This document shows positions 2,843 to 56,088 of a stretch of DNA of 64,000 nt, one piece after another (positions within the stretch are counted from its first letter, which is position 1; each line of letters begins with the position of its first letter). Both the position numbers and the translations under genes were made by a program. Location: IMG/VR virus record IMGVR_UViG_3300018962_000001, positions 62,001-126,000 of that record, one strand, 5' to 3'. The notes under the pieces were generated by a model, which was not told the DNA's origin, searched no databases, and saw only the letters and a program-made list of their open reading frames with translations.

Positions 2843-3178
2843 GTGATGACCGGAGATCGACAATCCTTGCTGCCCAACACGGGCAGCAATCTTATTCTCG
2901 TGTATGCCGATCCCCCGTGTCGTGATCTGGTGGACGGTGAGGCCATTGTGGAGGTCCGCGACGTTCCGCGGGGCGAGTGGCATCCACTGTGGTGGTGGCA
3001 GGAAACCGGGGTGGAGGTCTGCGTGTTTCCTTCGGTGGCAGCCGCGCAGTCCTGGGTTGAGAACCGGAACCGGGATCGCTATGATCAGTACGAGATCAAG
3101 GTCTGGCAGGATGGCCGTCTGATCCTGGCTCCCCCGTGTCATCCCTATCGTTGGGAGTCTCGCTATGGGAGTGTATGA
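2843..3178 (+). CDS. hypothetical protein
   Basis: AGGAG RBS, chain. Confidence 0.6.
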   Translation: MMTGDRQSLLPNTGSNLILVYADPPCRDLVDGEAIVEVRDVPRGEWHPLWWWQETGVEVCVFPSVAAAQSWVENRNRDRYDQYEIKVWQDGRLILAPPCHPYRWESRYGSV

Positions 3179-3545
3179 CTATCAAAGCCTGCGGGCACAT
3201 TACGGGCATCGGATCGTCTGCGCGGGCTATGGAACAGCACCCAACTTCGACAACATCGCCCTGGAATGCGAAACCTGTGGGGAGGTGTTGGTCGACTTTA
3301 ATCATCCGGCGGTGGAGCCGCCCGATTCGCCGCCCGTGTGTGTTGAGTGCGGCCAGCCGGGTACGGCGGGGTATCCGCTGGTTGAAACGGCTCCGGAGTT
3401 CGTTCATCGTGAAGGCTGTCCTGCTCCGCCTCCCACTGAGGCGGAGATGACTTTGCACTATACGACCTGCCCTGGATTCTACGGCCAACCGCACTGCTGC
3501 TGCAACGAGATTGCAGCGGAGATTCGGGGGAGTGACGAGGAGTGA
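3165..3545 (+). CDS. Cys/His-rich hypothetical protein
   Basis: CETC, CVEC, HCCC motifs. Confidence 0.6.
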   Translation: MGVYDYQSLRAHYGHRIVCAGYGTAPNFDNIALECETCGEVLVDFNHPAVEPPDSPPVCVECGQPGTAGYPLVETAPEFVHREGCPAPPPTEAEMTLHYTTCPGFYGQPHCCCNEIAAEIRGSDEE

Positions 3546-4291
3546 GGATCGTCATGGAGTATGAACCAACACCGGCTGAACGAAGCCGGATCGTCTGGAT
3601 TACGCGCAAACTCGAAGCTGCTCGGAGACGCCTGGCGCGGTTAGAGCGGAAACGGTATCCAGGGGATGAGCTACGGGAGCACTTTCACCTGGGCATGGTT
3701 GGTGGATCGGGCCGACAGAGCGCGCGCCTGAACCGGCGCAAGGAGCGTGCCTTCGATCGGTTTCTCGACGATAACCGGACGAAGATCGATCTCCGCGCAC
3801 GGATCACCGCGTGGGAATCTGAGATCGAAGCTATTCAGGCCGGGCGACGGGCGCAGGAACAGGCGGAACGTCTCGCCCGGCGGAAGCCCAAAGTGCCCGC
3901 CCGTCCGCGCCGTCCCCGGCCCGCTGCGCCGCCATTTGACTATGCTGCCTATAATGCCCGCGCGGATGCCCTGTATGCCTTCTGTGAGGCGCAGATCCAG
4001 ACGGTTGCGGGGATCTGCCCGAAGGAGTGGACCAACCTGGAGGGTCGCCGGGCGGATGGCTTGCGGTGGGCCTGGATCACCGTCCAAGGATGCTTAGCTG
4101 CCGCCCATATGCGCCCCGAACCGGCGACGCTGACGATGATCCAACAATCCTTGCAGCGGGAACGCAGGCGCTGCGAGCAGCAGCTGGCGGACGCCGGGAC
4201 GACGATCCCGTATCGTGTGTTTCTCCAGACCGTGCTAACGACTATTACGGAGATCGAGTCGCATATTGAGGCGGGCGTGGTCAGTCTGTGA
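3542..4291 (+). CDS. hypothetical coiled-coil protein
   Basis: 249 aa, GTGA overlap. Confidence 0.65.
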   Translation: MRIVMEYEPTPAERSRIVWITRKLEAARRRLARLERKRYPGDELREHFHLGMVGGSGRQSARLNRRKERAFDRFLDDNRTKIDLRARITAWESEIEAIQAGRRAQEQAERLARRKPKVPARPRRPRPAAPPFDYAAYNARADALYAFCEAQIQTVAGICPKEWTNLEGRRADGLRWAWITVQGCLAAAHMRPEPATLTMIQQSLQRERRRCEQQLADAGTTIPYRVFLQTVLTTITEIESHIEAGVVSL

Positions 4292-11914: not shown

Positions 11915-13393
11915 ATGAGCAAAGGGGGGGGCAGTATGCACAGAGCGCCAATCAGCCAGATTGATTCCACAATCATTCCATTCGAGGTTCGCCAGATTAT
12001 GATGGCGATCGAGGATGCGGGGGGGCACCCCTGGATTGTCGGTGGCTTTATTCGGAATATCCTGATCCGGTCAATCCATCCGTCGATTCCCTGCGAGATC
12101 GACTTTAAAGATATTGACCTGGAAGTCTTCGATCTGGAGCCGGAGGCGGTTTTTGCCATTGTGCGGCCCTTGGTCCCGCATTGCCAGATGGATGTCGGGA
12201 ATCAGTTCCCGGTCATCAAGGCCCGGACCCACAGTGGAATCGAGCTGGATGTTGCCGCGCCACGGCGGGAGCGTAAGACTGGAGCGGGCCATCGGGGCTT
12301 TACGGTCACGGTAGATGTCCATATGCCACTGGCCGAGGCCGCCCGGCGACGAGACTTTCGGATGAATGCGATTGCGCTGGATCTGTGCGGTACGATCGCT
12401 GACCCAATGGACGGCATGGCCGATATTGTCCATCAGGTGATTCGCGTATGTGATCCGGCGGGGTTCCATGAAGATCCGAACCGCGTGCCGCGCGCCATGC
12501 AATTTGCCAGTCGCTTTGATTTTGCCCCGGATGCCGAGTGTATCGCCGCCGCCGCCGCCGCCATTGGCGAGGCTCCCCGGATTCCTGCCGAGATCTGGTG
12601 GGGGGAGTGGGAAAAGTGGGCATCGAAGGGCGTTCGACCCAGCCGAGGACTGCTGTTTCTCCGTGCCTGCGGCTGGATCGGTCTGTTCCCAGAGGCGGCT
12701 GCCTTGATCGGGACGGCCCAGGACCCGGAATGGCACCCGGAAGGCGATGTCTGGACGCATAGCTGCTTAAGCGCCGATCGTGCGGCGGAGATCGCCGCAC
12801 GGGACGGGATCACGGGACGCGCGCGCGCGGCCTTCGTGATTGGCTGCTTTGCGCATGATTTCGGGAAGGCCGAGCCGGGCGTCAGTTTCGTCAAAGACGG
12901 ACGGATTGTGTCACCCGGCCATGATGAGGCCGGAGTTGCTCCGGCGACTCGGTTCTTGAATCGAATCAACGCGCCGCATGCAGTACGCGATCAGGTCATT
13001 GCCTGTGTCCGTCACCATATGGCGCATGTTGGGGTTGAACCAAGTCAGCGAATCGTCAATCGCTGGGCAAAACGATTCCATCCGGCCTCGATTCAGGAGA
13101 TTGCGCGGGTCGCTGAGGCCGACCATTGCGCCCGCCCACCGTTGCCAGGCGGTGCCCCAATGGCTCCCTTTGTGGCGCTGGCCGAGTCCGAGGGGGTTGC
13201 CCATCAGCGCCCGAAGCGGATTATCGAGGGTGGCCGCATCATCGAGATATTTGGGATCGCACCCGGACCACAGGTAGGCATGATCGTCCGGGCTGCCGAG
13301 CAAGCCCAAATTGAAGATCGGGCTTTTAGCGATGAGGCGGGAGCCATTCAATGGATTGCCAACCAGTTCGATCTTGCTCTTGTAACCCCTTGA
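11915..13393 (+). CDS. cca: CCA-adding tRNA nucleotidyltransferase (class II) with HD domain
   Basis: VGGFIRN, KDIDL, RRDFRMNAIA, EDPNRVPRAMQFASRF, HPEGDVWTH...AHDFGK. Confidence 0.85.
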   Translation: MSKGGGSMHRAPISQIDSTIIPFEVRQIMMAIEDAGGHPWIVGGFIRNILIRSIHPSIPCEIDFKDIDLEVFDLEPEAVFAIVRPLVPHCQMDVGNQFPVIKARTHSGIELDVAAPRRERKTGAGHRGFTVTVDVHMPLAEAARRRDFRMNAIALDLCGTIADPMDGMADIVHQVIRVCDPAGFHEDPNRVPRAMQFASRFDFAPDAECIAAAAAAIGEAPRIPAEIWWGEWEKWASKGVRPSRGLLFLRACGWIGLFPEAAALIGTAQDPEWHPEGDVWTHSCLSADRAAEIAARDGITGRARAAFVIGCFAHDFGKAEPGVSFVKDGRIVSPGHDEAGVAPATRFLNRINAPHAVRDQVIACVRHHMAHVGVEPSQRIVNRWAKRFHPASIQEIARVAEADHCARPPLPGGAPMAPFVALAESEGVAHQRPKRIIEGGRIIEIFGIAPGPQVGMIVRAAEQAQIEDRAFSDEAGAIQWIANQFDLALVTP

Positions 13394-32697: not shown

Positions 32698-33053
32698 TTG
32701 TTGAAATCTTCCATAATCGCATTCAGTGCCGCCGGTGTGGCGGTGTGATCGAATCGTTGCACGTCAACGATTTTCGCTGGTGTCCCTGTCGCGCCGTTGC
32801 AGTTGATGGGGGGCATGAGTATCTGCGCTGGCTGGGGAATCGTGAAGACATTGTTGATCTGTCGGAGACGCGCGAGATCCCTGACGAGCAGTGGGAAGCC
32901 CAGATGGATGCCGATCTGAATGCCGAGGTTGCGGCTATCATTGGCGAGGTGGCATGCGATTCTGAACCGCGCCCTGATTTCCCCCGGTTTCGGGCCGCGC
33001 TTGCCGATCTGCTTGCCGATCGGCAACGTCACCCTCCTCGCACGAGCGAGTGA
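32694..33053 (+). CDS. Zn-ribbon phage protein (paralog 2)
   Basis: IFHNRIQCRRCGGVIES...CPC..VAVDGG. Confidence 0.7.
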   Translation: MIVEIFHNRIQCRRCGGVIESLHVNDFRWCPCRAVAVDGGHEYLRWLGNREDIVDLSETREIPDEQWEAQMDADLNAEVAAIIGEVACDSEPRPDFPRFRAALADLLADRQRHPPRTSE

Positions 33054-33060
33054 TCACTCC

Positions 33061-33089
33061 TTGACGTATGCTTGTATTTGCGCTACTGT
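33061..33089 (+). promoter_or_regulatory. sigma70-type promoter
   Basis: TTGACG-N17-TACTGT. Confidence 0.65.
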
Positions 33090-33117
33090 GAGGCATACCG
33101 AATCAGGAGGACTCACG

Positions 33118-34383
33118 ATGGCTGAGGTATTGGACTCCATCGCCCTGTACTGCGGTACGGGCGGATCAAACAAGGTCTGGGGAGCTGCGGTCGTGCAGGA
33201 CGGCGATACTGTCACGTATCTGTACTGCAACGGCGCGGTTGGTACGGCGATGACTCCCAAGATCGAACGCATGGCGGATTCTCCAACGGCCCGCAAGCAT
33301 TACGAAAAAAAGGTCCGCGAGAAGCGAGGCAAGGGCTACGTGCCGGTGGACCTGGGCGATCCCTTTTATGGTGTCGGTCGCGTGCTCGCGGCAGCCCATC
33401 CCGCGCTTGCGGACTCCGGCGGCGGCGGCGCAGCCAGCTATGTTGCCGAAACGGTGGCCCGCGATACGCGCGTGGTCGTGAGCCGCGTGTTGCCGGTGGA
33501 TGAGTCCCGCTTTGCGGCAGTGATGGCCGATCCCGCCTATGGCCTGACCGAGAAGGCCAACGGGAAGCGAGTCACGGTGGAGTGGACCGGCACGGAACTG
33601 CGCGCCTATAACCGGAAAGGCCAGCGCCTCCCGGTCGTGCCACGCGCGGCGGAATCCCTCCCCAGCATCGGCATCCCCTTTTTGATCGACGGTGAAGACA
33701 TCCCTGGCGGGGGATATGTCATGTTCGATCTCTTAGAGTTCAACGGCGGTTCGATCCGGCACCTGGAATTTGCGAGTCGGATTCGGACCTTAGCGCGGCT
33801 CGTGACCGAGGCCGGATTGCTGATCATGTATGGAGCGGAGGTCGCCGATAGCCTGAGCGATACGCCAGGGCTGGCGCTCCTCTCGCCGGTGACGAGCACC
33901 GACGAGAAACACTCCACCTTGCAGGCGATTCGGGCCGCGAACGGCGAGGGCGTGATCCTGCGGCGCATGGACGCGCCTTCGGTCGAGGGGAATAGTCGGG
34001 ACGAACTCAAATACAAGTTTACGCCGCAGATTGATGCGGCGGTGATCGGTATGAAACCTGGGCGTCAACATGGATCGCTGCGCCTGGGGCTGTATCGCCC
34101 TGATGGATCACTCATTGAGATCGGATTTGTGTATAACGGGTTAACAACCGCTGATCTCGAACACATCACCCAGCTCTATCTCAACGGCCAGGAGCCGGTG
34201 TTAGCGGTGAGCTTCCTGCAAGCACGCACCGTGGGTATCCGCCTGGTCGAGCCAACCACAACAATCGCCGATCTTCGCACCGATAAGAGAGCCAGAGATT
34301 GCACCACCGAGCAGCTGATCGAGATTTTAGGAGCCGATCGCGCCCCGTTGATCGCCGCAGCGCCTGCGGTTGTGCCGAATTGA
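33118..34383 (+). CDS. WGR-domain ATP-dependent polynucleotide (DNA) ligase
   Basis: N-terminal SNKVW...KVREKRGKGY (WGR-like); ligase motifs TEKANG, LIDGE, YVMFDLL, GEGVILR, ELKYK; C-terminal OB-like region. Confidence 0.7.
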   Translation: MAEVLDSIALYCGTGGSNKVWGAAVVQDGDTVTYLYCNGAVGTAMTPKIERMADSPTARKHYEKKVREKRGKGYVPVDLGDPFYGVGRVLAAAHPALADSGGGGAASYVAETVARDTRVVVSRVLPVDESRFAAVMADPAYGLTEKANGKRVTVEWTGTELRAYNRKGQRLPVVPRAAESLPSIGIPFLIDGEDIPGGGYVMFDLLEFNGGSIRHLEFASRIRTLARLVTEAGLLIMYGAEVADSLSDTPGLALLSPVTSTDEKHSTLQAIRAANGEGVILRRMDAPSVEGNSRDELKYKFTPQIDAAVIGMKPGRQHGSLRLGLYRPDGSLIEIGFVYNGLTTADLEHITQLYLNGQEPVLAVSFLQARTVGIRLVEPTTTIADLRTDKRARDCTTEQLIEILGADRAPLIAAAPAVVPN

Positions 34384-37789: not shown

Positions 37790-37984
37790 ATGTATCTGAC
37801 GAAAGCAGAGCGAAACACGCTCCTCCTCGTGGTGAATGAGCGCCTGGCGGGAGGACCTGACGATCTTGCCGATGCGTTGGGTATTGATCTTGATGAAGCC
37901 GAGCAGGAGGTGAGTCGCCTTCAGTTGATCGCAACCAAGCTGGCTCACTCATTAGGAGGACGCGATCGTGGACCCCATCGTTGA
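37790..37984 (+). CDS. hypothetical protein
   Basis: AGGA RBS. Confidence 0.55.
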   Translation: MYLTKAERNTLLLVVNERLAGGPDDLADALGIDLDEAEQEVSRLQLIATKLAHSLGGRDRGPHR

Positions 37985-38510
37985 TCAAATTGGTCATCTT
38001 ACCGCAGCCGATCTCGGTAATCTGCTGTATGAGGGCCGGGCCATGCCGGATCGTCCACCATTAACGGATGATTTGCTCGAACAGGCGCAATACGCCTTTG
38101 CCCGCTGGGTACAACTTGCCTCAGTTACCACAACCTTTCCTGATTGGCACACCGCATGGGCCGCATACCGCGCCGCTGGAAAGCCCCACTGGCCGTTGCC
38201 GCCCGCGTCGATTGTGGATCGCTGGATCTGCCAGGGTGGGTGGCGTGCCTGGGTAAAGGGCGAACGGGGACAAGTCTTTATCGATCTCATCAGGTTAGAG
38301 TCCTATGATTGGATCATGAGTCTTCGACGATCGTTTCGTGGCGGGACGGACTCGGATCTTCTGATGAGCAAGCGGCTCACGGGCACCCTGGAATCTGTTC
38401 AGCAGCAAGCGGAGGAGGCTGCCGCAACCCACCTTGGCTATTACCGCTGGCAGGACATGGATCTGAACCGTCCCTATCACCCCTTCGCTGAGCGGCGGCG
38501 GACCCTATGA
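37968..38510 (+). CDS. hypothetical protein
   Basis: GGAGG RBS. Confidence 0.65.
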   Translation: MDPIVDQIGHLTAADLGNLLYEGRAMPDRPPLTDDLLEQAQYAFARWVQLASVTTTFPDWHTAWAAYRAAGKPHWPLPPASIVDRWICQGGWRAWVKGERGQVFIDLIRLESYDWIMSLRRSFRGGTDSDLLMSKRLTGTLESVQQQAEEAAATHLGYYRWQDMDLNRPYHPFAERRRTL

Positions 38511-39166
38511 GTGTGCGGATCAAGTACCCGCGCACACCGCATTTCATGTGGTCACGAGGAGTGGCTTCCGATGATCAGCTCCTGGCCTACCTGCGCCATT
38601 GGATTGACCAGCCGGTGGTGATCACCGCGAAGATGGACGGAGAGAACACCACCATCTATGGTGATGGACTCCATGCCCGATCGATTGATAGCCGGAGCCA
38701 TCCCTCGCGATCGTGGGTCCAGCAGTGGTCGGCGACCTGGAGGCATGAACTCCCTCGCGGCTGGCGGGTATGCGGCGAAAATCTGTATGCCCGGCACTCG
38801 ATCCACTACCGGCATTTAACGAGCTATTTCTACGGGATCTCGATCTGGAATGACGAGAACCTATGTCTGGCCTGGGATGATACAACCATGTACTTTACAC
38901 TGCTTGGCATCACGCCGGTCCCGGAGCTATGGCGCGGGGTGTGGAGTCCGCGTACGGAGCGCTGGCTGCGGGATGGCGCACTTGCAGCAGAAACACATGC
39001 GGGTGATCCGCTCGAAGGTTATGTGGTGCGCCTGGCTGGGCCGATTCGGTATCGTGATTTCTCAGACTCGGTTGCCAAGTATGTCCGCGCGCACCACGTC
39101 CAAACCACGGATCGCTGGAGTCGCGATCAGATCGTCCCCAATCGGCTTCGCCAATCCGACAGCTAG
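38507..39166 (+). CDS. ATP-dependent RNA ligase family protein
   Basis: KYPRTPH, motif I TAKMDGEN, CGENLYARHSIHY, FYGISIW, EGYVVR, KYVR. Confidence 0.85.
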   Translation: MSVRIKYPRTPHFMWSRGVASDDQLLAYLRHWIDQPVVITAKMDGENTTIYGDGLHARSIDSRSHPSRSWVQQWSATWRHELPRGWRVCGENLYARHSIHYRHLTSYFYGISIWNDENLCLAWDDTTMYFTLLGITPVPELWRGVWSPRTERWLRDGALAAETHAGDPLEGYVVRLAGPIRYRDFSDSVAKYVRAHHVQTTDRWSRDQIVPNRLRQSDS

Positions 39167-39284: not shown

Positions 39285-39512
39285 ATGGCTGATGTTACCG
39301 TGGAAAAGATGATGATCCATATTCGCTACGGCGGAACGTCGCAGGACGTTCCGGCGGATACGCTGGATATTGGCAACTTGTCGAGCGATACCGATGTCCG
39401 TAATGCGCTGGCCCGGCACCTGGGTGTCGATCCGGGGCGCTTGAGCGGGTATCGCGTTGACCGCGAGCCAACCGGCAATCTCACCGTTCGTCCAGAAGCC
39501 GTTTTCGGCTAG
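39285..39512 (+). CDS. ubiquitin-like (beta-grasp) modifier ending in Gly
   Basis: 75 aa, C-terminus LTVRPEAVFG*, co-operonic with JAB and E1. Confidence 0.7.
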   Translation: MADVTVEKMMIHIRYGGTSQDVPADTLDIGNLSSDTDVRNALARHLGVDPGRLSGYRVDREPTGNLTVRPEAVFG

Positions 39513-39574
39513 TGAGCCGCACCAACCAACTTGCGCGTGCTGGCCGCAGCACGCGCTCACACCCGGAGGAGTCT

Positions 39575-46681: not shown

Positions 46682-46905
46682 GATCGCCGCATCCTTATCC
46701 GGTGAGCGTACATGCTTTCGGTTGAAACCCGAGAGGTCCCTGGTTCGATCCCAGGTCTCCCCACCAGTCCCGTAGGCGCGGGAGCCGTCGCAAGCGGCTA
46801 ACTCGTGAGTATCCGGGTGGCGGACTCGCTTCGCCACGCGGGGGGAGATAGCTCAGTTGGTAGAGCGCTTATGTTTGTTCCGCTCGACGACCTTGTGCGG
46901 CGATC
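46682..46905 (+). ncRNA. handle RNA 8: permuted tRNA-Phe(GAA); 3' half 46719-46766, 5' half 46842-46869
   Basis: GATCGCCGCA/TGCGGCGATC outer stem; halves join to a perfect 76-nt cloverleaf. Confidence 0.8.
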
Positions 46906-47251
46906 TCCACTCCTGCCTTCGGCCTCGTGGCACCGATGTGCTGGGTTAAAGATCCCAAGGGAGCTTGCCACGTCCATTCACCGCAGGCCATCACCGTGAG
47001 GCGGCCACGATCCAGCGTGCTGGTGACAAAAGCGGTTGACTTTGCTGGGTGGAACAGGAACCTGGCTGCCAGCGCCACCTGCTGGGAGAAGTTCTGATAA
47101 GGCCAGCGGGACGCTCCTGCGACACCTGCTGTGCGGACGAACGTGGTGGCTTGCCATAGGCATGGGACTCGCTTCGGCGGGGAGCGACCAGCGGCCTGAT
47201 TGCGGGGCGTGAGTTTGCCGGTCTCGCCTTAGACAAAACCGGCGTATCTAT

Positions 47252-47329
47252 CGGGATGTGGCTCAGTCTGGCTAGAGCACTGCGTTCGGGACGCAGGGGT
47301 CGCAGGTTCAAATCCTGCCATTCCGACCA
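47252..47329 (+). tRNA. tRNA-Pro(CGG)
   Basis: canonical cloverleaf, ACCA. Confidence 0.95.
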
Positions 47330-47618
47330 GGATCAGGCCAGCGGCGCGGCACGGGGGAAACCGGCGGCGGCGGCGTTTCTTCGGAAGGGCCGGGATGCCG
47401 TGCATGATTACACTCCGTGCGCGTCGCGGACGATCTCGTCCGGCCAGCACCCGCAAGCAACCTCCCTTGCGTGTGTTGCTTGCAGCGGTCGGCTCCGAGC
47501 CGTGGACGATTCGGGCACGACAAGACCAGATCTGGCGTCCCCTTATCATCGGCGCTTACATTCGTGATGAGATTGACGCGCCGTGTCCTTGGACGCCAGA
47601 TCCCCGACAGGAGTGCGT

Positions 47619-47879
47619 ATGTCCACAATGCCTCCGGCCACTCAGATCGCGTCACTTCCTTCGGTGGCCGATCTGGAGCGGATGTACCAGGAGATCGATG
47701 ACGACCCGCATATTGCGCCGGACCAGAAGCAGATGCGGAAGGAGGCAGTCCTGGGCGACTGGGTGGATGGTCGTCGTCGCCAGGCGGAACAGACGATCGA
47801 GTCCCTTCGGTCTGGGACCGCAGGCCGTCCCTTGGGGCCGCCCCGCCGCCGCCGCCGGGGACTTTGGTGTTATTGGTAG
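47619..47879 (+). CDS. hypothetical protein
   Basis: AGGAG RBS. Confidence 0.5.
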   Translation: MSTMPPATQIASLPSVADLERMYQEIDDDPHIAPDQKQMRKEAVLGDWVDGRRRQAEQTIESLRSGTAGRPLGPPRRRRRGLWCYW

Positions 47880-47888
47880 GAGCGTGCT

Positions 47889-48386
47889 GTGGGTCATGTT
47901 GTCTCACGTTGGATCAAAGCCGGTCGTCTGCGGCGGGAGGCCGAAGACATTGGGAATACCGCAGAACGGATGGGTGTCGATGATTTAGCGTGTCGAGCCT
48001 TTGCCTTCGCGGCACGCATCCAGAGGTATGAGCAACGCTGGCGACAGCGCCTGACTGTTCCCCCGGAGAATCCCGTACCCAAGACTCGTTCTGAGGCCGA
48101 GGAGGCGTTTTGGGCCTATTGGGACACCCTTTCCGCCAAGCAGAAGCAGCAGATCCGCGAAATGCACGCTCCTGATCTGTGTCAGCGGATCGCGGCCATT
48201 ACTCACGAAATACGAACGCTGCCGGTGACAATCGCACATCACTGGCAGGTAGGGGCGTACGACCTGGCGAAAGCAGCGATTGCACGCTTGCACCGACTCA
48301 ACACCGAGGAGCATGCGTTGCGCAACGAGTGCCTGAACCGCGTAAAACACCACCTTGTCGACTATCGTACGGGCTTGAGGTCCTGA
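47889..48386 (+). CDS. hypothetical protein
   Basis: AGGAG RBS; 3' end overlaps tRNA-Ala. Confidence 0.6.
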   Translation: MGHVVSRWIKAGRLRREAEDIGNTAERMGVDDLACRAFAFAARIQRYEQRWRQRLTVPPENPVPKTRSEAEEAFWAYWDTLSAKQKQQIREMHAPDLCQRIAAITHEIRTLPVTIAHHWQVGAYDLAKAAIARLHRLNTEEHALRNECLNRVKHHLVDYRTGLRS

Positions 48387-48446
48387 AGGGAGGACGCCTG
48401 GTTTGCACCCAGGAGGTAGCGGGTTCGATCCCCGCCGAGTCCACCA
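48371..48446 (+). tRNA. tRNA-Ala(TGC)
   Basis: G3-U70, loop TT-TGC-AC, ACCA; A8. Confidence 0.9.
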
Positions 48447-48543
48447 TTGGTCCCGGCCTATCCGGGGGCAGCTCTGCGGGTAAGCTTGCCGGATGAATAA
48501 TGGAGTACTCCATGAAAAATCCTAGCACCCCCGCCCCTTCTGA

Positions 48544-48616
48544 TCCACGCTAGGCGAATTGGTAAGCCGTGAAGCTTTGGACTTCAAGATTCCTGGTTCG
48601 AGTCCAGGGCGTGGAA
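48544..48616 (+). tRNA. tRNA-Gln(TTG)
   Basis: T1-A72, loop CT-TTG-GA; no encoded CCA. Confidence 0.9.
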
Positions 48617-48621
48617 TCTTT

Positions 48622-48704
48622 GGGTTGGATGCGGCAGGGACCGCGTGCGGGCTGTAACCCCGTTGCCTTTGGCTAGGGAGGTTCGATACCTCTCCAACCC
48701 ACCA
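48622..48704 (+). tRNA. tRNA-Tyr(GTA)
   Basis: long variable arm, ACCA. Confidence 0.85.
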
Positions 48705-48896
48705 ATCCTCCGCTGCTGCCCGCCCTTCGTACGGAGGCCCGGCGGCGGCGGCGGTATCCGCGCCGTATAGGCCGCTCTGGATACGTCTCTGGAGCATGCC
48801 CGTAAGTCAATCCCCATCACCCCCGGTGGCACGAGCGCGGGAGTCGGGCAGCGTTGGACGACGAGGCGCTGCCCGGCGAGGGGGAAACGAGGAAGT

Positions 48897-49124
48897 ATGG
48901 ACCGCAAGGAGATCGGGCGCGAGATCAATGCCCTTGCTCAACGAATCAAGCCCCATAATGTCGCCGTGGGCCGACTTTTACAAGTTGTGGCGGGGGCGGT
49001 CTTTTCGCACCGCGAAGGTCTGCTGATCCAGGTAATTCACCCAGCAGCCGAGTTGATCCTGAGTGCGTTGAAGCTGGCGCGGATTCAACAGTCTGAGCAT
49101 AGTGAAAGGGCATCCGACCCATGA
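48897..49124 (+). CDS. hypothetical protein
   Basis: GAGG RBS. Confidence 0.55.
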   Translation: MDRKEIGREINALAQRIKPHNVAVGRLLQVVAGAVFSHREGLLIQVIHPAAELILSALKLARIQQSEHSERASDP

Positions 49125-49330
49125 GCCGCTACACACAGCGTGAACAGGACGTAGCAGACCTCTTAGATCGGGTAGAATCGGGATCTGGAGTCATCAGTGA
49201 TTTCACCGTTGACGACATTCTGCGCTACTTGATCCGGGCAACCGATCTGGAAGAAGTCACGATGTGTCTGGAGTTTATTCGTGCCGAGCAGGAATCGGCC
49301 CCCACCGATCCTGAACGGCTCTCATGGTAG
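49121..49330 (+). CDS. hypothetical protein
   Basis: ATGA overlap. Confidence 0.6.
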   Translation: MSRYTQREQDVADLLDRVESGSGVISDFTVDDILRYLIRATDLEEVTMCLEFIRAEQESAPTDPERLSW

Positions 49331-49339
49331 GAGGATACG

Positions 49340-49585
49340 TTGGTTGGGGGACAGGTGATTGATACCATTGTCCTTGTGGACAAGGTGTGGGTGAATACGC
49401 AGGCAGGGCGCGACACGTGCGCTATCTATGTCGAACGATCGCCAGATACGGAGCGGATTGCGCTCGGCGATTCGGTGTGGTGGCAAGGTCGGGAAGCGTA
49501 CTGGACCTCGGAGTCAATGGGGTGTGTCGATCGACCCATCCCGCGCATCGGGTACTCCGGTGTGGAACGCCCGGACGAGGCATAA
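49340..49585 (+). CDS. hypothetical protein
   Basis: GGAGG RBS. Confidence 0.6.
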   Translation: MVGGQVIDTIVLVDKVWVNTQAGRDTCAIYVERSPDTERIALGDSVWWQGREAYWTSESMGCVDRPIPRIGYSGVERPDEA

Positions 49586-49609
49586 GACCGCGATGATCGG
49601 AGCGCAGAG

Positions 49610-50020
49610 ATGTTTCCACGACGTATGAGCGATTTGCTGGATCTCGGGGTGAGCGTTCGAGTTGCCGAGCCGGATACCGATCCGTGGGATGGTGTGATCA
49701 TCCGATTTACGGAGGGAAGCTTCTCTGCTCCGGGCGAAGAAGAAGTCATCGTGATGCGAAAAGCTGACTATGATACGAGTGGTCAATCGCACGCGGGGAA
49801 TACGGCGCGGGTCGAAGTACAATACCTTACCCCGCTTGATCCGGGGGCTTCATTTCGGACGGCGGCGGCGGCGGTCTTGGAGTGGTTGAGTCGTGAATAT
49901 ATTATCGCTGAGGATAATATCGTCCGAGAGATATTCCCAACGTCCAAGACGATAGAAGAATTGGCGACCGATTTTGCAGAAACGCAGCTTCGAACGATGG
50001 CAGGCGAGGAGTGGGAATAA
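49610..50020 (+). CDS. hypothetical protein
   Basis: GGAG RBS; stop abuts tRNA. Confidence 0.65.
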   Translation: MFPRRMSDLLDLGVSVRVAEPDTDPWDGVIIRFTEGSFSAPGEEEVIVMRKADYDTSGQSHAGNTARVEVQYLTPLDPGASFRTAAAAVLEWLSREYIIAEDNIVREIFPTSKTIEELATDFAETQLRTMAGEEWE

Positions 50021-50096
50021 CGCGGTGTAGCTCAACTGGTGGAGCAGGCGTCTCATACGCGCCGGGCTGGTGGTTCGAATCCACCCATCGCGACCA
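50021..50096 (+). tRNA. tRNA-Met/Ile2(CAT), elongator type
   Basis: paired C1-G72, loop CT-CAT-AC, ACCA. Confidence 0.9.
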
Positions 50097-50410: not shown

Positions 50411-50486
50411 GTGCTTGTAGCTCAGTTGGTAGAGCATCTGTCTGAAAAGCAGAAGGTCGCGGGTTCGATCCCCGCCGAGTACACCA
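50411..50486 (+). tRNA. tRNA-Phe(GAA)
   Basis: canonical cloverleaf, ACCA. Confidence 0.95.
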
Positions 50487-54173: not shown

Positions 54174-54248
54174 GGGGGCGTATGCTATGGGTAATGCAGC
54201 GAGACTTTCAATCTCGTGATGGGGGTTCGAGTCCCCCCGTCCCTACCA
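54174..54248 (+). tRNA. tRNA-Glu(TTC)
   Basis: loop CT-TTC-AA, ACCA. Confidence 0.9.
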
Positions 54249-54269
54249 TTTTGTTGGATCGGAGGCCCT

Positions 54270-54965
54270 ATGTGGCACCCGGCGATGCCGGAGGCGTATC
54301 AGAACCAGATCCTTACGGCGGATTGCCGGGCATTTGCCGCGCAGATCCCGGACGAAAGCTGTGACTTGATCTTTACTGATCCCGTGTACGAGCGCATCGA
54401 GGACTATGCCTGGCTCGCGGAAACGGCGCAGCGAATCTTGAAACCAAACTCGGCCTGTCTCGTCTGGTATGATCATCCACGTTTTGATGCTGCCTATCGT
54501 GTGATGGTTCCACCCCTCACCTATGTGTGGCAGATGTACTGGCAGCGGTATGGCGCACCTACGGCGGGGCGTGCGGGCATTACGGTGATTACGCCGTGTC
54601 TTTGGCTTGAAAAGGGGCGAAGTCGAACGTATCGCAAAATCGGGGATGCCTACGGCGCTGGATTTGGTGGGGATCGGCTCTTTGAGCATAAGTGGTCAAA
54701 GCCCTATGGCCTTGTGCGCAAATGGGTGGATGCCTTTACCAAACCGGGGATGGTGGTCGCCGATTTCTTCTGTGGGTCAGGCGTGGTACCGGGTGCGTGT
54801 ACCGAGCTAGGGCGCAACTATCTCGCCTGCGAGATCGATCCGCACACGGCAAGCAAAGCCCGGCAGGCGGTCAGTCGGATTCAGGTCCCCCATCCCGATC
54901 TTGTCGGTCAGGAGGGCTGGGACATGGGCGCTCAGAAAAAGAAACGGAAAGGATCACGGACATGA
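54270..54965 (+). CDS. DNA methyltransferase (N4-C/N6-A, beta class)
   Basis: DLIFTDPVY precedes VVADFFCGSG. Confidence 0.85.
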   Translation: MWHPAMPEAYQNQILTADCRAFAAQIPDESCDLIFTDPVYERIEDYAWLAETAQRILKPNSACLVWYDHPRFDAAYRVMVPPLTYVWQMYWQRYGAPTAGRAGITVITPCLWLEKGRSRTYRKIGDAYGAGFGGDRLFEHKWSKPYGLVRKWVDAFTKPGMVVADFFCGSGVVPGACTELGRNYLACEIDPHTASKARQAVSRIQVPHPDLVGQEGWDMGAQKKKRKGSRT

Positions 54966-55708
54966 GGGTTGAGTCATTTGAGGTAGCGATCCCGGAAGGG
55001 TTGGAGAGTGGTGAGGGCTATGTGCATGTCGCCTCCGGGCAGGTATTTTCGGTCGCCCTGCACAATTACGATCCGACCCATCGGTGTAACGCGACCGTGA
55101 CGGTCAATGGCCGTCCGGCGGGAACCTTCCGCCTGGACCGCGGAGGATTGGCTCAGGCAGTGACTCGCATCACCCATCCATCGGATTCCCAACAACTATT
55201 TACGGCGTTCGCCGTGGAGAGCACTGCCGGACAGATTGTGGGTGCAGCACCAACGGCCCAGGAGGGCGGCCTCATCGAGGTTCGCTTTGTGCCGGAGGAT
55301 CGGAGGCCCTATCGTCCGGTGCCTCTGGTTGTGTCAGAGGCATCTCCAACCTCGACCTGGCCGGGCGTCCCCAAGCGAATGATGCCAGGCGCTCCGCCGA
55401 TCTCGTATGACTCGGAAGGGCTTATGGGCGCGGCGGGTGCGGCGATTGATATGGGCGACATCGCCTTTGCCAGCCCCGGTCCCGCGCGGCGTTCAACGCC
55501 AGCGCCGGAATCGACACTCCAGGCTGCGACGGTCGGCTTAACGGGCCACACGAGCCATCAGTACCGGAGCGCTCCCGCCATGCCACTTGATGAGGCACGG
55601 GCCGTCACGATCCGCCTCCGGCTGGTAATCAATCCCGGCCTGGCACCGCAGGGCACGTCTGGGCAGGGTGTCGATCGGGGCAATCCGATCCCGCCACCGA
55701 TCGGGTAA
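54962..55708 (+). CDS. hypothetical protein
   Basis: ATGA overlap; beta-rich N-terminus. Confidence 0.65.
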   Translation: MRVESFEVAIPEGLESGEGYVHVASGQVFSVALHNYDPTHRCNATVTVNGRPAGTFRLDRGGLAQAVTRITHPSDSQQLFTAFAVESTAGQIVGAAPTAQEGGLIEVRFVPEDRRPYRPVPLVVSEASPTSTWPGVPKRMMPGAPPISYDSEGLMGAAGAAIDMGDIAFASPGPARRSTPAPESTLQAATVGLTGHTSHQYRSAPAMPLDEARAVTIRLRLVINPGLAPQGTSGQGVDRGNPIPPPIG

Positions 55709-55718
55709 GGGCAACGAT

Positions 55719-56012
55719 ATGCGTAATTGGCAGGCGGATCTTACCCGGTATTGTGAACTGTATCCGATGTACTATGCCGATCTGGTGGAACGGTGGACGA
55801 TTGAACAGGTCGGCGATCGCTGGGTGCTCTGTGAAGCAGGGCGGATCGCGACTCCCGACGAGTATGAGTCGGCGGCGGCGGCGGATACCGATCGATGGCT
55901 CCAGATTTATATCGCCCTGGATCAGCACGACCAATGTCGATCGATCGATCGAGCACTCCGACGTGAACTGGCGCATCGCATGGACGCCTATCGTGATGTC
56001 TTAGAACCCTAA
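55719..56012 (+). CDS. hypothetical protein
   Basis: stop abuts tRNA-Cys. Confidence 0.6.
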   Translation: MRNWQADLTRYCELYPMYYADLVERWTIEQVGDRWVLCEAGRIATPDEYESAAAADTDRWLQIYIALDQHDQCRSIDRALRRELAHRMDAYRDVLEP

Positions 56013-56088
56013 CTCGGCGAGGCGAAATGGGAACGCGGCTGTCTGCAAAACAGCTATTGAGCGGGATCGTAACCCGCCGCCGAGTCCA
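56013..56088 (+). tRNA. tRNA-Cys(GCA)
   Basis: U73, CCA; A8 and T loop ATCGTAA. Confidence 0.85.

What the first reader, a model, noticed from the sequence alone, without database searches (positions are those of the whole stretch)
46682..46905. Permuted tRNA-Phe whose halves rejoin into a perfect 76-nt cloverleaf
Seen: the 3' half (46719-46766, ending ACCA) precedes the 5' half (46842-46869), separated by a 75-nt hairpin-rich linker. Joining gives a 7/7 acceptor GGGGAGA/TCTCCCC and a 5/5 AC stem CTCGG/CCGAG. A canonical tRNA-Phe also exists at 50411, so this copy is not simply needed for decoding. Such perfect complementarity argues for selection on the joined fold.
Basis: seen in the sequence. 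Interest (0 to 1): 0.85.

Follow-up and report, generated by a model that had tools for sequence, protein, structure and literature searches.

The report
Phage Y RNA shaped as permuted tRNA-Phe
The "permuted tRNA-Phe" is real, but it is best read as one of seven tandem Y-RNA-like tRNA mimics that a huge phage encodes next to a highly divergent Ro60 protein gene, rather than as a tRNA gene whose halves are spliced back together.

Summary
Window 46719-46766 (3' half, ends ACCA) and 46842-46869 (5' half) join into a perfect 76-nt tRNA-Phe(GAA) cloverleaf. It is not a one-off. The element 46682-46905 is copy E7 of seven tandem, same-strand cassettes (43815-46905) that share one frame: outer stem, internal loops, a second stem ending GAGCR, then UACAY. 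E6 is a second permuted tRNA (Gln-UUG) broken at the same place, 28|29. E3 is a third (anticodon UUA) with a closed acceptor hairpin. Homologous cassettes occur in unrelated metagenomic contigs and beside a conserved bacterial operon. A covariance model built only from those outside copies finds E7 at 61.7 bits (E 5e-13). Rfam's YrlA (bacterial Y RNA) model matches outside copies at up to 52 bits (E 3e-9), below its cut-off of 69. The 504-aa protein encoded 2.7 kb upstream on the same strand folds as a full-length Ro60 (TM 0.60-0.65) despite 13-15% identity. Best reading: a divergent YrlA-class Y RNA, that is, a circularly permuted tRNA mimic. It is probably cut by RNase P and trimmed to its encoded CCA, giving a two-piece RNA, as shown for M. 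smegmatis YrlA. Rejoining into a decoding tRNA is not supported. New variant of a known kind.

The parts
46682..46905 (+). Cassette E7: the whole Y-RNA-like element that contains the permuted tRNA-Phe(GAA)
   Evidence: MFE fold closes the element and forms all tRNA arms. Frame parse. CM built from outside copies hits 46683-46905 at 61.7 bits, E 5e-13.
46682..46692 (+). E7 outer stem, 5' strand (GAUCGCCGCAU); pairs with 46895-46905
   Evidence: 11-bp helix. Own-flank helices are 10-14 bp against 5-9 bp for mismatched flanks.
46693..46713 (+). E7 5' internal loop (CCUUAUCCGG), stem 2 5' strand (UGAGCG) and the conserved UACAU motif
   Evidence: Frame alignment of the 7 copies. The motif GAGCRTACAT occurs exactly 4 times, all in the array. 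It lies where YrlA has its GGCGAAUGC region.
46714..46718 (+). E7 leader GCUUU between UACAU and tRNA position 29
   Evidence: Homologous GCAUU / GCAUUU leaders in L211 cassettes.
46719..46766 (+). 3' part of the tRNA-Phe body: positions 29-76 (rest of the anticodon arm with GAA, variable loop AGGUC, T arm, acceptor 3' strand UCUCCCC, A73, CCA)
46767..46841 (+). 75-nt linker with three hairpins, sitting in the position of the YrlA acceptor-stem loop; predicted to be removed
   Evidence: Treated as a 78-nt insertion in the acceptor loop by the family CM. Relatives have 4-14-nt loops here.
46842..46869 (+). 5' part of the tRNA-Phe body: positions 1-28 (acceptor 5' strand GGGGAGA, U8 A9, D arm GCUC AGUUGGUA GAGC, G26, C27 U28)
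46870..46905 (+). E7 trailer UAUGUUUGUUC, stem 2 3' strand CGCUCG, 3' loop ACGACCUU, outer stem 3' strand
   Evidence: Trailer nearly identical to that of L211 cassette D in a 37% GC contig. The AUGU of the trailer pairs with the ACAU of the motif.
46304..46595 (+). Cassette E6: second permuted tRNA, Gln(UUG)-like. 3' half 46343-46390 (ends ACCA), 138-nt linker 46391-46528, 5' half 46529-46556; outer stem 46309-46317 / 46581-46589
   Evidence: (ARAGORN tRNA-Gln when rotated; same 28+48 split).
46201..46295 (+). Cassette E5: frame plus a T arm and a UUCG hairpin only
   Evidence: Weak Rfam YrlA hit with the same bounds, 46202-46297.
45505..45643 (+). Cassette E4: frame enclosing a non-permuted tRNA-like body (ARAGORN 'tRNA-Arg tct' 45538-45612; 5-bp acceptor, no CCA)
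44065..44202 (+). Cassette E3: permuted tRNA-like body with anticodon loop CUUUAAC (UUA) and a closed 7-bp acceptor hairpin with loop GCCUAU
   Evidence: (rotated: ARAGORN tRNA 'Stop' tta). CM 55.1 bits, E 2e-11.
43958..44044 (+). Cassette E2: frame plus a single hairpin, with no tRNA-like part
43815..43946 (+). Cassette E1: frame enclosing a non-permuted tRNA-like body (ARAGORN 'tRNA-Ser tga', 71 nt, no CCA) plus a GNRA hairpin
   Evidence: CM 43.3 bits, E 1e-8.
43786..43813 (+). Sigma-70-type promoter (TTGACA-16-TATACT) directly in front of E1
   Evidence: The same promoter type precedes the bacterial cassette in L200 and the L212/L213 cassette.
39512..41089 (+). Divergent Ro60 (TROVE ring + vWA) gene; the called product is 504 aa (from about 39575). 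Proposed protein partner of the cassettes
   Evidence: No Pfam TROVE hit, only a faint vWA_Ro60 hit. AF2 pLDDT 88.5. Top 12 PDB fold matches are all Ro60/Rsr, TM 0.60-0.65, E 1e-10 to 2e-8.
39285..43789 (+). Operon around the Ro60-like gene: 75-aa Ubl-like protein (39285-39512, ends AVFG), Ro60-like, VWA (41086-41841), 289-aa protein (41845-42714), JAB (42644-43108), ThiF/E1-like (43130-43789)
   Evidence: Same gene order in bacteria.
38507..39166 (+). ATP-dependent RNA ligase (PF09414) immediately upstream of the operon
11915..13393 (+). CCA-adding enzyme

Best explanation
The element 46682-46905 is a non-coding Y RNA of the YrlA class, meaning a circularly permuted tRNA mimic whose 5' and 3' ends pair into a long stem. 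It belongs to a divergent subfamily that partners with a divergent Ro60-like protein. SHOWN: it is one of seven homologous cassettes. Its frame and tRNA-like core are homologous to cassettes that sit beside Ro60-like operons in bacteria. A Ro60-fold protein is encoded 2.7 kb upstream of the array on the same strand. Its module order (closing stem, hairpin, T arm, acceptor hairpin, D arm, closing stem) is that of YrlA. INFERRED: the RNA is released from the tRNA/cassette polycistron by the processing of its tRNA neighbours (tRNA-Pro ends at 46680). It folds into a tRNA L-shape from which the three-part stem branches at the 28|29 break in the anticodon stem. The conserved stem 2 / UACAY / GACUY region is the binding platform for the Ro60-like protein. 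Because the acceptor stem has 7 bp and is followed by A73-CCA, RNase P cuts 5' of G1 (46841|46842). The 75-nt linker is then trimmed back to the encoded CCA, with repair by the phage CCA-adding enzyme if needed. This is what was demonstrated for M. smegmatis YrlA. The product would be a two-piece RNA (85 nt + 64 nt) held together by the acceptor stem, pairs 27-43 and 28-42, and the frame helices. It would display a free CCA end and a Phe anticodon loop. Its likely job is to tether or gate the Ro60-like protein towards tRNA-binding factors in an RNA-repair or quality-control setting; an RNA ligase, a CCA-adding enzyme and 36 tRNAs are nearby. It may also act as bait for enzymes that recognise particular anticodon loops.
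For: Family membership: seven cassettes share one frame. Each 5' flank pairs best with its own 3' flank (10-14 against 5-9 bp). Relatives found by a metagenome scan and beside bacterial operons have the same frame, the same 28|29 break and the same D/T scaffold. RNAalifold on 8 outside copies gives 19 of 27 pairs with compensatory changes. A CM built only from outside copies hits E7 at 61.7 bits, E 5e-13, full length; E3 scores 55.1 and E1 43.3, while the best tandem-tRNA false positive scores 30.5. Link to YrlA: Rfam RF02553 matches L213/L212 cassettes full length at 51.9/51.5 bits, E about 3e-9, and the operon-adjacent bacterial copies at 36-40 bits. Partner: Ro60 fold of the 504-aa protein. 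Cassettes lie beside the operon in four of the six distinct bacterial loci examined (L200/L201 counted once) and in the phage. Processing: the acceptor loop begins N73-CCA in E6, E7, L211B, L211D, L213_1/L212_1, L213_2, L200_1 and L218_1, and N73-CC in E3. For M. smegmatis YrlA, RNase P cleavage, nibbling and CCA addition give 82- and 65-nt halves (PMC4201824; bioRxiv 10.1101/312249). The E7 pieces would be 85 and 64 nt and cofold at -65.4 kcal/mol against -36.0 apart, keeping all arms.
Against: The YrlA Ro-site motif GNCGAAN0-1G is absent from all 17 copies tested. No copy reaches Rfam's gathering score of 69, and window copies score only 17-19 bits with that model. Classical YrlA lacks an anticodon loop, while these RNAs have canonical 7-nt anticodon loops, which is unexplained for a mere scaffold. 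Binding to the Ro60-like protein, RNase P cleavage and the mature ends are all inferred; no expression data exist. In L200/L201 the cassettes are on the opposite strand to the operon, and two operon loci (L199, L217) have none within 10 kb. No close relative of this phage exists, so the E7 linker cannot be compared with an orthologue.
Confidence: 0.68

Rival explanations
1. A genuine permuted tRNA-Phe gene. Leader and trailer are removed, the 28|29 nick in the anticodon stem is sealed (for example by the phage RNA ligase encoded at 38507-39166), RNase P and 3' trimming remove the linker, and a normal 76-nt chargeable tRNA-Phe results. This would resemble the permuted tRNA genes of red and green algae and archaea.
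For: The cloverleaf is perfect, with a canonical 7-nt anticodon loop, A73 and an encoded CCA. The break lies inside a helix, where a nick is templated by the opposite strand; from my own knowledge, that is the substrate type of Rnl2-like ligases. An RNA ligase gene lies 8 kb upstream. Pairs 27-43 and 28-42 are kept across the split in five distinct copies with four different sequences. The anticodons are diverse across the family.
Against: There is no bulge-helix-bulge that puts both cut sites at 28|29: the 5' exon end abuts the ACAU/AUGU helix without a bulge. From established knowledge, bacteria lack the tRNA splicing endonuclease. Canonical tRNA-Phe and tRNA-Gln(UUG) are present. The same frame carries cargoes that cannot become tRNAs (E2, E5, L213_2, L200_2). 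All copies share one D/T scaffold rather than those of the cognate tRNAs: E6 has G1-C72 where the window's own tRNA-Gln has U1-A72, the UAG copy lacks the long Leu variable arm, and the Ile and Arg copies have C73 and U73 (the identity rules are from my own knowledge). Some bacterial copies lack CCA in the loop.
Confidence: 0.1
2. A closed, unprocessed Y RNA. The 224-nt transcript stays in one piece, the 75-nt linker is simply an enlarged acceptor-stem loop (possibly a further protein-binding module), and the ACCA is never exposed.
For: Most YrlA RNAs are thought to keep a closed acceptor loop (10.1101/312249). E5, L211A, L219 and L220 copies have loops without CCA. The linker is itself well structured.
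Against: N73-CCA at the start of the loop or linker recurs far more often than the 1/64 expected per copy, including in copies not selected for it (L211D, L213_2, L200_1, L218_1). The 7-bp acceptor plus T arm is the canonical RNase P determinant and sufficed for M. smegmatis YrlA.
Confidence: 0.17
3. Debris or artefact: decayed tandem duplicates of a tRNA-Phe gene, an integration-site remnant, or a mis-assembly.
For: tRNA arrays do accumulate fragments, and other T-arm-like fragments exist in the window.
Against: The same architecture recurs twice in the window with different sequences and compensatory changes. It recurs in independent assemblies from other samples and in a bacterial MAG. It is found by a model trained elsewhere at E 5e-13. 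Stems are intact in all copies.
Confidence: 0.02

Closest known systems
YrlA-type bacterial Y RNAs (Rfam RF02553), especially Mycobacterium smegmatis YrlA
   Same: The 5' and 3' ends pair into a long stem. The effector module is a circularly permuted tRNA in the order hairpin, T arm, acceptor stem-loop, UA, D arm, with conserved GCUC/GAGC D stem and T loop. It is encoded next to a Ro60 gene and is also found in phages. The M. smegmatis RNA has a 7-bp acceptor stem, is cut by RNase P, nibbled and given CCA, and yields 82- and 65-nt halves (PMC4201824; 10.1101/312249). E7 would give 85 and 64 nt. There is significant though sub-threshold similarity to the Rfam model.
   Different: The GNCGAAN0-1G Ro-site motif is replaced by GAGCR-UACAY. 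A full anticodon stem-loop is present as an insertion relative to the YrlA model, so the closing stem branches off at 28|29 instead of replacing the anticodon stem. In E6/E7 the ACCA is encoded and followed by a 75-138-nt structured linker instead of a short loop. There are up to seven tandem copies with varied cargo, including non-permuted tRNA-like bodies. The Ro60 partner is so divergent that Pfam TROVE misses it, and it sits in an operon with Ubl, VWA, JAB and ThiF genes.
Permuted tRNA genes of Cyanidioschyzon merolae, prasinophyte algae, some archaea and prasinovirus BpV1
   Same: The 3' half is encoded upstream of the 5' half on one transcript, with a linker joining the CCA end to position 1. 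Leader and trailer pair with each other.
   Different: Those genes are matured through a bulge-helix-bulge cut by the splicing endonuclease, ligation to a circle, and then RNase P / tRNase Z. They are the only genes for their isoacceptors, and their junctions lie in loops (own knowledge; PMC3673656 for the viral case). Here the host is bacterial (sigma-70 promoters), there is no BHB, the break is inside the anticodon stem, the copies are redundant, and the frame is conserved beyond what processing would need.
Two-piece (permuted) tmRNA of alpha-proteobacteria, cyanobacteria and others
   Same: A bacterial tRNA-like domain is encoded in permuted order, and excision of an intervening segment leaves a two-piece RNA with a free CCA end.
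   Different: There is no tag reading frame or pseudoknots. ARAGORN finds no tmRNA. The Rfam tmRNA models give only fragmentary hits.

Membership tests
YrlA / bacterial Y RNA | 5' and 3' ends pair to form a long stem | tested here: met
   11-bp outer stem plus stem 2 in E7. All seven copies have outer stems of 9-14 bp specific to their own flanks.
YrlA / bacterial Y RNA | tRNA-like module in permuted order: (V hairpin), T arm, acceptor stem-loop, UA, D arm | tested here: met
   The Rfam YrlA alignment lays T, AS and D of the L213/L212 copies on the model. The family CM aligns E7 the same way.
YrlA / bacterial Y RNA | GNCGAAN0-1G motif near the 5' end (presumed Ro60 site) | tested here: not met
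   Absent in 17 of 17 copies. R-UACA-H lies at nt 25-30 instead. It is aligned under the YrlA GGCGAAUGC region.
YrlA / bacterial Y RNA | Reaches the Rfam RF02553 gathering score (69 bits) | tested here: not met
   Window copies score 17-19 bits. Relatives score 24-52 bits, best E 2.5e-9. No positive control with a known YrlA could be run.
YrlA / bacterial Y RNA | Encoded within about 4 kb of a Ro60 (TROVE) gene, usually on the same strand | tested here: met
   Ro60 fold of the 39512-41089 product. The array starts 2.7 kb downstream on the same strand, and E7 itself is 5.6 kb away. Bacterial copies lie 0.02-0.5 kb from the operon. Pfam TROVE itself does not hit.
YrlA / bacterial Y RNA | Bound by Ro60 in vivo | not testable with these tools
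   Needs pull-down or EMSA.
YrlA, M. smegmatis type | 7-bp acceptor stem cleaved by RNase P, with the 3' end carrying CCA | tested here: inconclusive
   The 7-bp stem and the encoded A73-CCA are present. Cleavage itself cannot be tested here.
Permuted tRNA gene (algal/archaeal type) | 3' half upstream of 5' half; the rotated sequence is a canonical tRNA | tested here: met
   Cross-join control.
Permuted tRNA gene (algal/archaeal type) | Bulge-helix-bulge at the leader/trailer junction with both cut sites in bulges | tested here: not met
   By inspection of the fold and sequence. The 3' site follows a 5-nt bulge, but the 5' site abuts the ACAU/AUGU helix. A BHB reading would leave UAUG on the 5' exon.
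Permuted tRNA gene (algal/archaeal type) | Splicing endonuclease in the host; the gene is needed for decoding | tested here: not met
   Sigma-70 promoters indicate a bacterial host. Canonical tRNA-Phe and tRNA-Gln(UUG) are present. The absence of EndA in bacteria is established knowledge and was not tested here.
Two-piece tmRNA | Tag peptide reading frame and tmRNA pseudoknots | tested here: not met
   ARAGORN finds no tmRNA. Only weak fragmentary Rfam hits.

The most novel reading that the evidence does not exclude
These cassettes are a bacterial/phage system of 'stored' permuted tRNAs. After RNase P and CCA processing, the Ro60-like-bound two-piece RNAs are chargeable. They are either used as such or sealed at the templated 28|29 nick by the adjacent RNA ligase to release functional tRNAs (Phe, Gln, and an ochre-reading UUA species) when host defences destroy the normal tRNA pool. 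That would be the first permuted tRNA genes matured in the bacterial domain, and a concrete function for the tRNA-like module of Y RNAs.
Probability: 0.12. Interest if true: 0.9.

Novelty: new variant of a known kind. Interest (0 to 1): 0.62.

Why it matters
Y RNAs with tRNA-like modules are known, but what the module does is an open question. This subfamily keeps everything a tRNA needs: a 7-bp acceptor stem, N73-CCA, D/T elbow and a canonical anticodon loop whose identity differs between copies. It adds a conserved stem that branches from the anticodon stem, and it travels with a Ro60 so divergent that standard annotation misses both partners.

That gives concrete experimental handles: RNase P cleavage, charging, and Ro60-like binding. 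It also reveals a large unannotated Ro60-like family (>900 members) in an operon with ubiquitin-like conjugation genes. For genome annotation, it warns that tRNA finders call parts of these cassettes as tRNAs (E1 and E4 here) and miss the permuted ones. For phage biology, it suggests that huge phages import an RNA-surveillance module (RNA ligase, Ro60-like, Y RNAs, CCA enzyme, tRNAs) as one block.

Tried and rejected
1. Close relatives of the phage. megablast and distant blastn against deposited phages found only ordinary tRNA similarity. Three IMG/VR pattern scans and one protein scan returned only the window's own contig or chance hits. The ORFan gene 47889-48386 has no homologue among 5.8 billion proteins.

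2. The loose frame filter was mostly noise and was abandoned.

3. LR756511 (a 595-kb phage) was at first taken as a relative, but the shared protein belongs to a horizontally spread bacterial operon, so I did not pursue it.

4. I first judged the operon unrelated to the RNAs, because L199 has none. I reversed that after Rfam and sequence reading of L200, L218, L219 and L220.

5. Known self-cleaving ribozymes and group I introns: no Rfam hit at E <= 1-10 across 43750-50000.

6. UACAU as a MazF-type cleavage site (own knowledge): cutting there would not give a position-29 end, and part of the motif is base-paired. I left it as an idea only.

7. Positive control with M. smegmatis YrlA: two primer-derived patterns gave no hit in the representative genomes, and the paper's supplements are not held.

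8. RNA ligase typing: no PDB or NCBIfam sequence match.

9. The reviews that might describe the Ro60/Ubl operon (PMC5062991, PMC10870794) are not held.
Full report
**1. The observation**

The window is part of IMG/VR contig IMGVR_UViG_3300018962_000001. It looks like a huge phage: 36 tRNA genes, a CCA-adding enzyme, and mostly ORFan proteins.

A 48-nt 3' half ending ACCA (46719-46766) is followed by a 75-nt linker and then a 28-nt 5' half (46842-46869). Joined in silico, they give a 76-nt sequence that ARAGORN calls tRNA-Phe(GAA), with every stem perfect. In the native order nothing is called. A canonical tRNA-Phe is present at 50411. The break falls between positions 28 and 29, in the 5' strand of the anticodon stem.

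One caveat: only two of the five anticodon-stem pairs are contributed by the 5' half, and the native leader CUUU can close the hairpin on its own.

**2. It is one member of a repeated element**

An HMM scan for orphan tRNA pieces found a second 3' half ending ACCA (46343-46390) and a second 5' half (46529-46556) in the same permuted order. Rotated, this copy is called tRNA-Gln(UUG), and it is split into the same 28 + 48 nt.

Both permuted tRNAs, and five further elements between 43815 and 46905, sit in one conserved frame. That frame consists of:
- an outer stem of 9-14 bp whose sequence differs in every copy;
- a 5' internal loop, about UCCCAUCWG;
- a second stem whose 5' strand ends GAGCR;
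- the motif UACAY;
- a variable cargo;
- the 3' strand of stem 2;
- a 3' loop ending ACUY;
- the outer stem's 3' strand.

Profile HMMs of the frame recover exactly these seven copies in the window. Each copy's 5' flank pairs with its own 3' flank over 10-14 bp, against 5-9 bp for any other copy's flank.

The cargoes differ:
- E1 and E4 hold non-permuted tRNA-like bodies without CCA, which ARAGORN had called tRNA-Ser and tRNA-Arg.
- E2 holds a single hairpin.
- E5 holds a T arm and a UUCG hairpin.
- E3 holds a permuted tRNA-like body (anticodon UUA) whose 7-bp acceptor helix is closed by the loop GCCUAU.
- E6 and E7 hold complete permuted tRNAs whose acceptor helices are closed by 138- and 75-nt linkers that begin ACCA.

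E6 and E7 differ by eight compensatory double changes in 21 tRNA pairs. Three of these (5-68, 27-43, 28-42) span the split, and one pair is broken. Misassembly, chance and decay are therefore excluded.

**3. Relatives**

The phage has no sampled close relative. It returned six contigs.

Five of the six carry the full architecture (L215 shows the motif and a 3' half but no 5' half nearby), including features that were not in the pattern. These are the outer stem, stem 2 (GAGC/GCUC), loops of similar size, and, right after N73-CCA and 1-10 further nucleotides, the acceptor 5' strand, UA, and a D arm GCUC...GAGC. The next two nucleotides after the D arm complete the anticodon stem, so the break is again at 28|29.

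One 37% GC contig (L211) has at least five tandem cassettes. Its cassette D has the same GAGC-G-CU end and nearly the same trailer (UAUGUUUAUU) as E7 (UAUGUUUGUU). Rotated, the relatives are called tRNA-Asn(GUU), Leu(UAG), Met(CAU) and Ile(GAU). In a cross-join control, own halves were always called, and 17 of 30 mismatched joins were not.

**4. What family this is**

From the published description, YrlA Y RNAs have paired ends, a presumed Ro60 site near the 5' end, a conserved YUAY, and a tRNA-like module in the order V hairpin, T arm, acceptor stem-loop, D arm. They are encoded within about 4 kb of Ro60 on the same strand, also in phages (PMC4201824). The structure paper calls them circularly permuted tRNAs with closed acceptor stems. 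It also records that the M. smegmatis RNA, which has a 7-bp acceptor stem, is cut by RNase P, nibbled and given CCA (10.1101/312249).

Rfam's YrlA model matches the L213/L212 cassette over its full length at 51.9/51.5 bits (E about 3e-9). It matches the L211 cassettes at 27-29 bits and the window copies only at 17-19 bits. All are below the curated cut-off of 69. In the alignment, our stem 2 is YrlA's terminal helix, GAGCAUAC lies under YrlA's GGCGAAUGC, the T, acceptor and D arms coincide, and the anticodon hairpin is an insertion. The published Ro-site motif GNCGAAN0-1G is absent from all 17 copies examined.

**5. The protein partner**

The 525-codon ORF 39512-41089 (called product 504 aa) has no Pfam family apart from a faint vWA_Ro60 hit. 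It has more than 900 homologues at about 55% identity in diverse bacteria, all unannotated.

An AlphaFold model built from 41 homologues is confident (pLDDT 88.5, pTM 0.85). Its twelve best PDB matches are all Ro60, Rsr or TROVE structures, aligned over about 500-540 columns with TM 0.60-0.65, E 1e-10 to 2e-8, and 13-15% identity. It is therefore a highly divergent Ro60.

In the phage it lies in an operon with these genes: Ubl-like 75-aa protein, Ro60-like, VWA, a 289-aa protein, JAB, and ThiF. An RNA ligase lies directly upstream, and cassette E1 starts 26 nt after ThiF behind a consensus promoter.

The same operon occurs in bacteria. In four of the six distinct bacterial loci examined, cassettes of this family lie directly beside it:
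- two after ThiF in a Ktedonobacterales MAG, on the opposite strand (L200/L201);
- two after ThiF in L218;
- three in L219 and two in L220, upstream of the Ro60-like gene (most in the gap after the small-protein gene), on the operon strand.

The first L200 cassette has almost the same outer stem as E1 (UCAGGCGUGC against GGAGGCGUGC). It carries a permuted Arg(UCU)-like body with acceptor loop U-CCA-UUAU and the 28|29 break.

RNAalifold on eight outside copies gives 19 of 27 pairs with compensatory change. A covariance model built only from those outside copies ranks E7 first in the window (46683-46905, 61.7 bits, E 5e-13, full length, linker treated as an insertion). E3 follows at 55.1 bits and E1 at 43.3. 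The best tandem-tRNA false positive scores 30.5.

**6. Mechanism**

Shown: homology, architecture, covariation, and genomic linkage to a Ro60-fold protein.

Inferred: the RNA is released by the processing of flanking tRNAs and folds as an L-shaped tRNA body. From that body a three-part stem (ACAU/AUGU, stem 2, outer stem) branches at 28|29. The Ro60-like protein binds the conserved stem 2 / UACAY / GACUY region.

N73-CCA begins the acceptor loop or linker in most complete copies, including several that were not selected for it. The acceptor stem also has 7 bp. I therefore think RNase P cuts before G46842 and the linker is trimmed to the encoded CCA. This would give 85- and 64-nt pieces, which cofold at -65.4 kcal/mol against -36.0 apart. 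The sizes are close to the 82 and 65 nt reported for M. smegmatis YrlA.

Rejoining into a decoding tRNA is unlikely for five reasons:
- There is no bulge-helix-bulge consistent with a 28|29 junction.
- Bacteria lack the splicing endonuclease (established knowledge).
- Canonical isoacceptors exist in the window.
- Non-tRNA cargoes share the frame.
- The copies share one scaffold whose identity elements often do not fit the anticodon: E6 has G1-C72 where the window's own tRNA-Gln has U1-A72; the UAG copy has no long variable arm; the Ile and Arg copies have C73 and U73. The identity rules here are from my own knowledge.

Ligation is not excluded. The nick lies in a helix, and a ligase gene is nearby.

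**7. Novelty and limits**

The papers held here describe permuted tRNA genes in archaea, algae and one algal virus, but none in bacteria or phages. They describe YrlA RNAs as lacking an anticodon loop and a free CCA, except after processing in M. smegmatis. A jumbo-phage survey mentions TROVE proteins with a tRNA-like partner in a few phages. I could not read the reviews that might already describe the Ro60/Ubl operon.

On this evidence the finding is a new variant of a known kind. It is a YrlA-related Y RNA subfamily with a restored anticodon arm, an encoded CCA, a different protein-site motif, tandem arrays and a cryptic Ro60.

Nothing here is experimental. Binding, cleavage, mature ends and charging are all predictions.

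Noticed in passing
window 39285-43789: A complete operon: Ubl-like 75-aa protein (ends AVFG), divergent Ro60, VWA, a 289-aa protein, JAB and ThiF/E1-like. The same order recurs in Ktedonobacterales, Gemmataceae and other bacteria, with >900 unannotated Ro60-like homologues. A Ro60 embedded in a ubiquitin-like conjugation operon is unexpected, and I could not find it described in the papers held.
   Followed up: partly
window 43840-43910 and 45538-45612: ARAGORN's 'tRNA-Ser(tga)' (71 nt, no long variable arm) and one 'tRNA-Arg(tct)' lie inside cassettes E1 and E4. They have 5-bp acceptor stems that run on into the frame helix, and no CCA. They are probably not ordinary tRNAs, so the phage's tRNA count is inflated by two.
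   Followed up: partly
window 44065-44202 (E3): The permuted tRNA-like body in E3 has a canonical 7-nt loop, CUUUAAC, with anticodon UUA, which would read the UAA stop codon. Its acceptor loop is G-CC-UAU, one A short of CCA.
   Followed up: partly
window 46011-46116: A further tRNA-like element lies outside any frame. It has an 8-bp acceptor-type helix (CGAUCCCG/CGGGAUCG), a normal T arm, no CCA, and about 35 extra nucleotides in the middle. Rfam tRNA scores 26.8 bits, just under the cut-off.
   Followed up: no
window 44300-45029, 46906-47252, 47330-47889, 48704-50021, 54248-56013: Long stretches of the tRNA island hold only ORFs whose codon-position GC does not look coding (for example 47395-47988 and 54692-55708, GC2 0.58-0.63 against 0.45-0.49 in confirmed genes). 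A long hairpin lies at 44541-44674, and a second strong promoter at 44268-44296. Other non-coding RNAs may be there.
   Followed up: no
window 38507-39166, 37968-38510: A 219-aa RNA ligase (PF09414, nucleotidyltransferase domain only) with no PDB or NCBIfam sequence match is preceded by an overlapping 180-aa ORF of unknown function. Together they could form an end-healing/sealing pair.
   Followed up: partly
window 32920-34383: A 487-aa protein combines a WGR domain with a LigD-like ATP-dependent ligase domain.
   Followed up: no
L213 5870-6120 (minus strand): Directly downstream of the two cassettes lies a tandem array of about 15 copies of a 17-nt unit, GGGTAGTGGTCGGCA(C/T)T.
   Followed up: no
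L199 15381-17384 and L217 19916-20851: The two bacterial operon loci without cassettes have RlaP genes next to ThiF. RlaP is the RNA-ligase-associated Pol-beta nucleotidyltransferase, which again links the operon to RNA repair.
   Followed up: no
L211 4662-4834 (cassette C): A cassette with the family frame (outer stem 12 bp, UACAU) carries a 114-nt cargo with no recognisable tRNA part. L216, a 97-98% identical contig, additionally carries a phage-type HNH endonuclease gene (3065-3607, minus strand).
   Followed up: no
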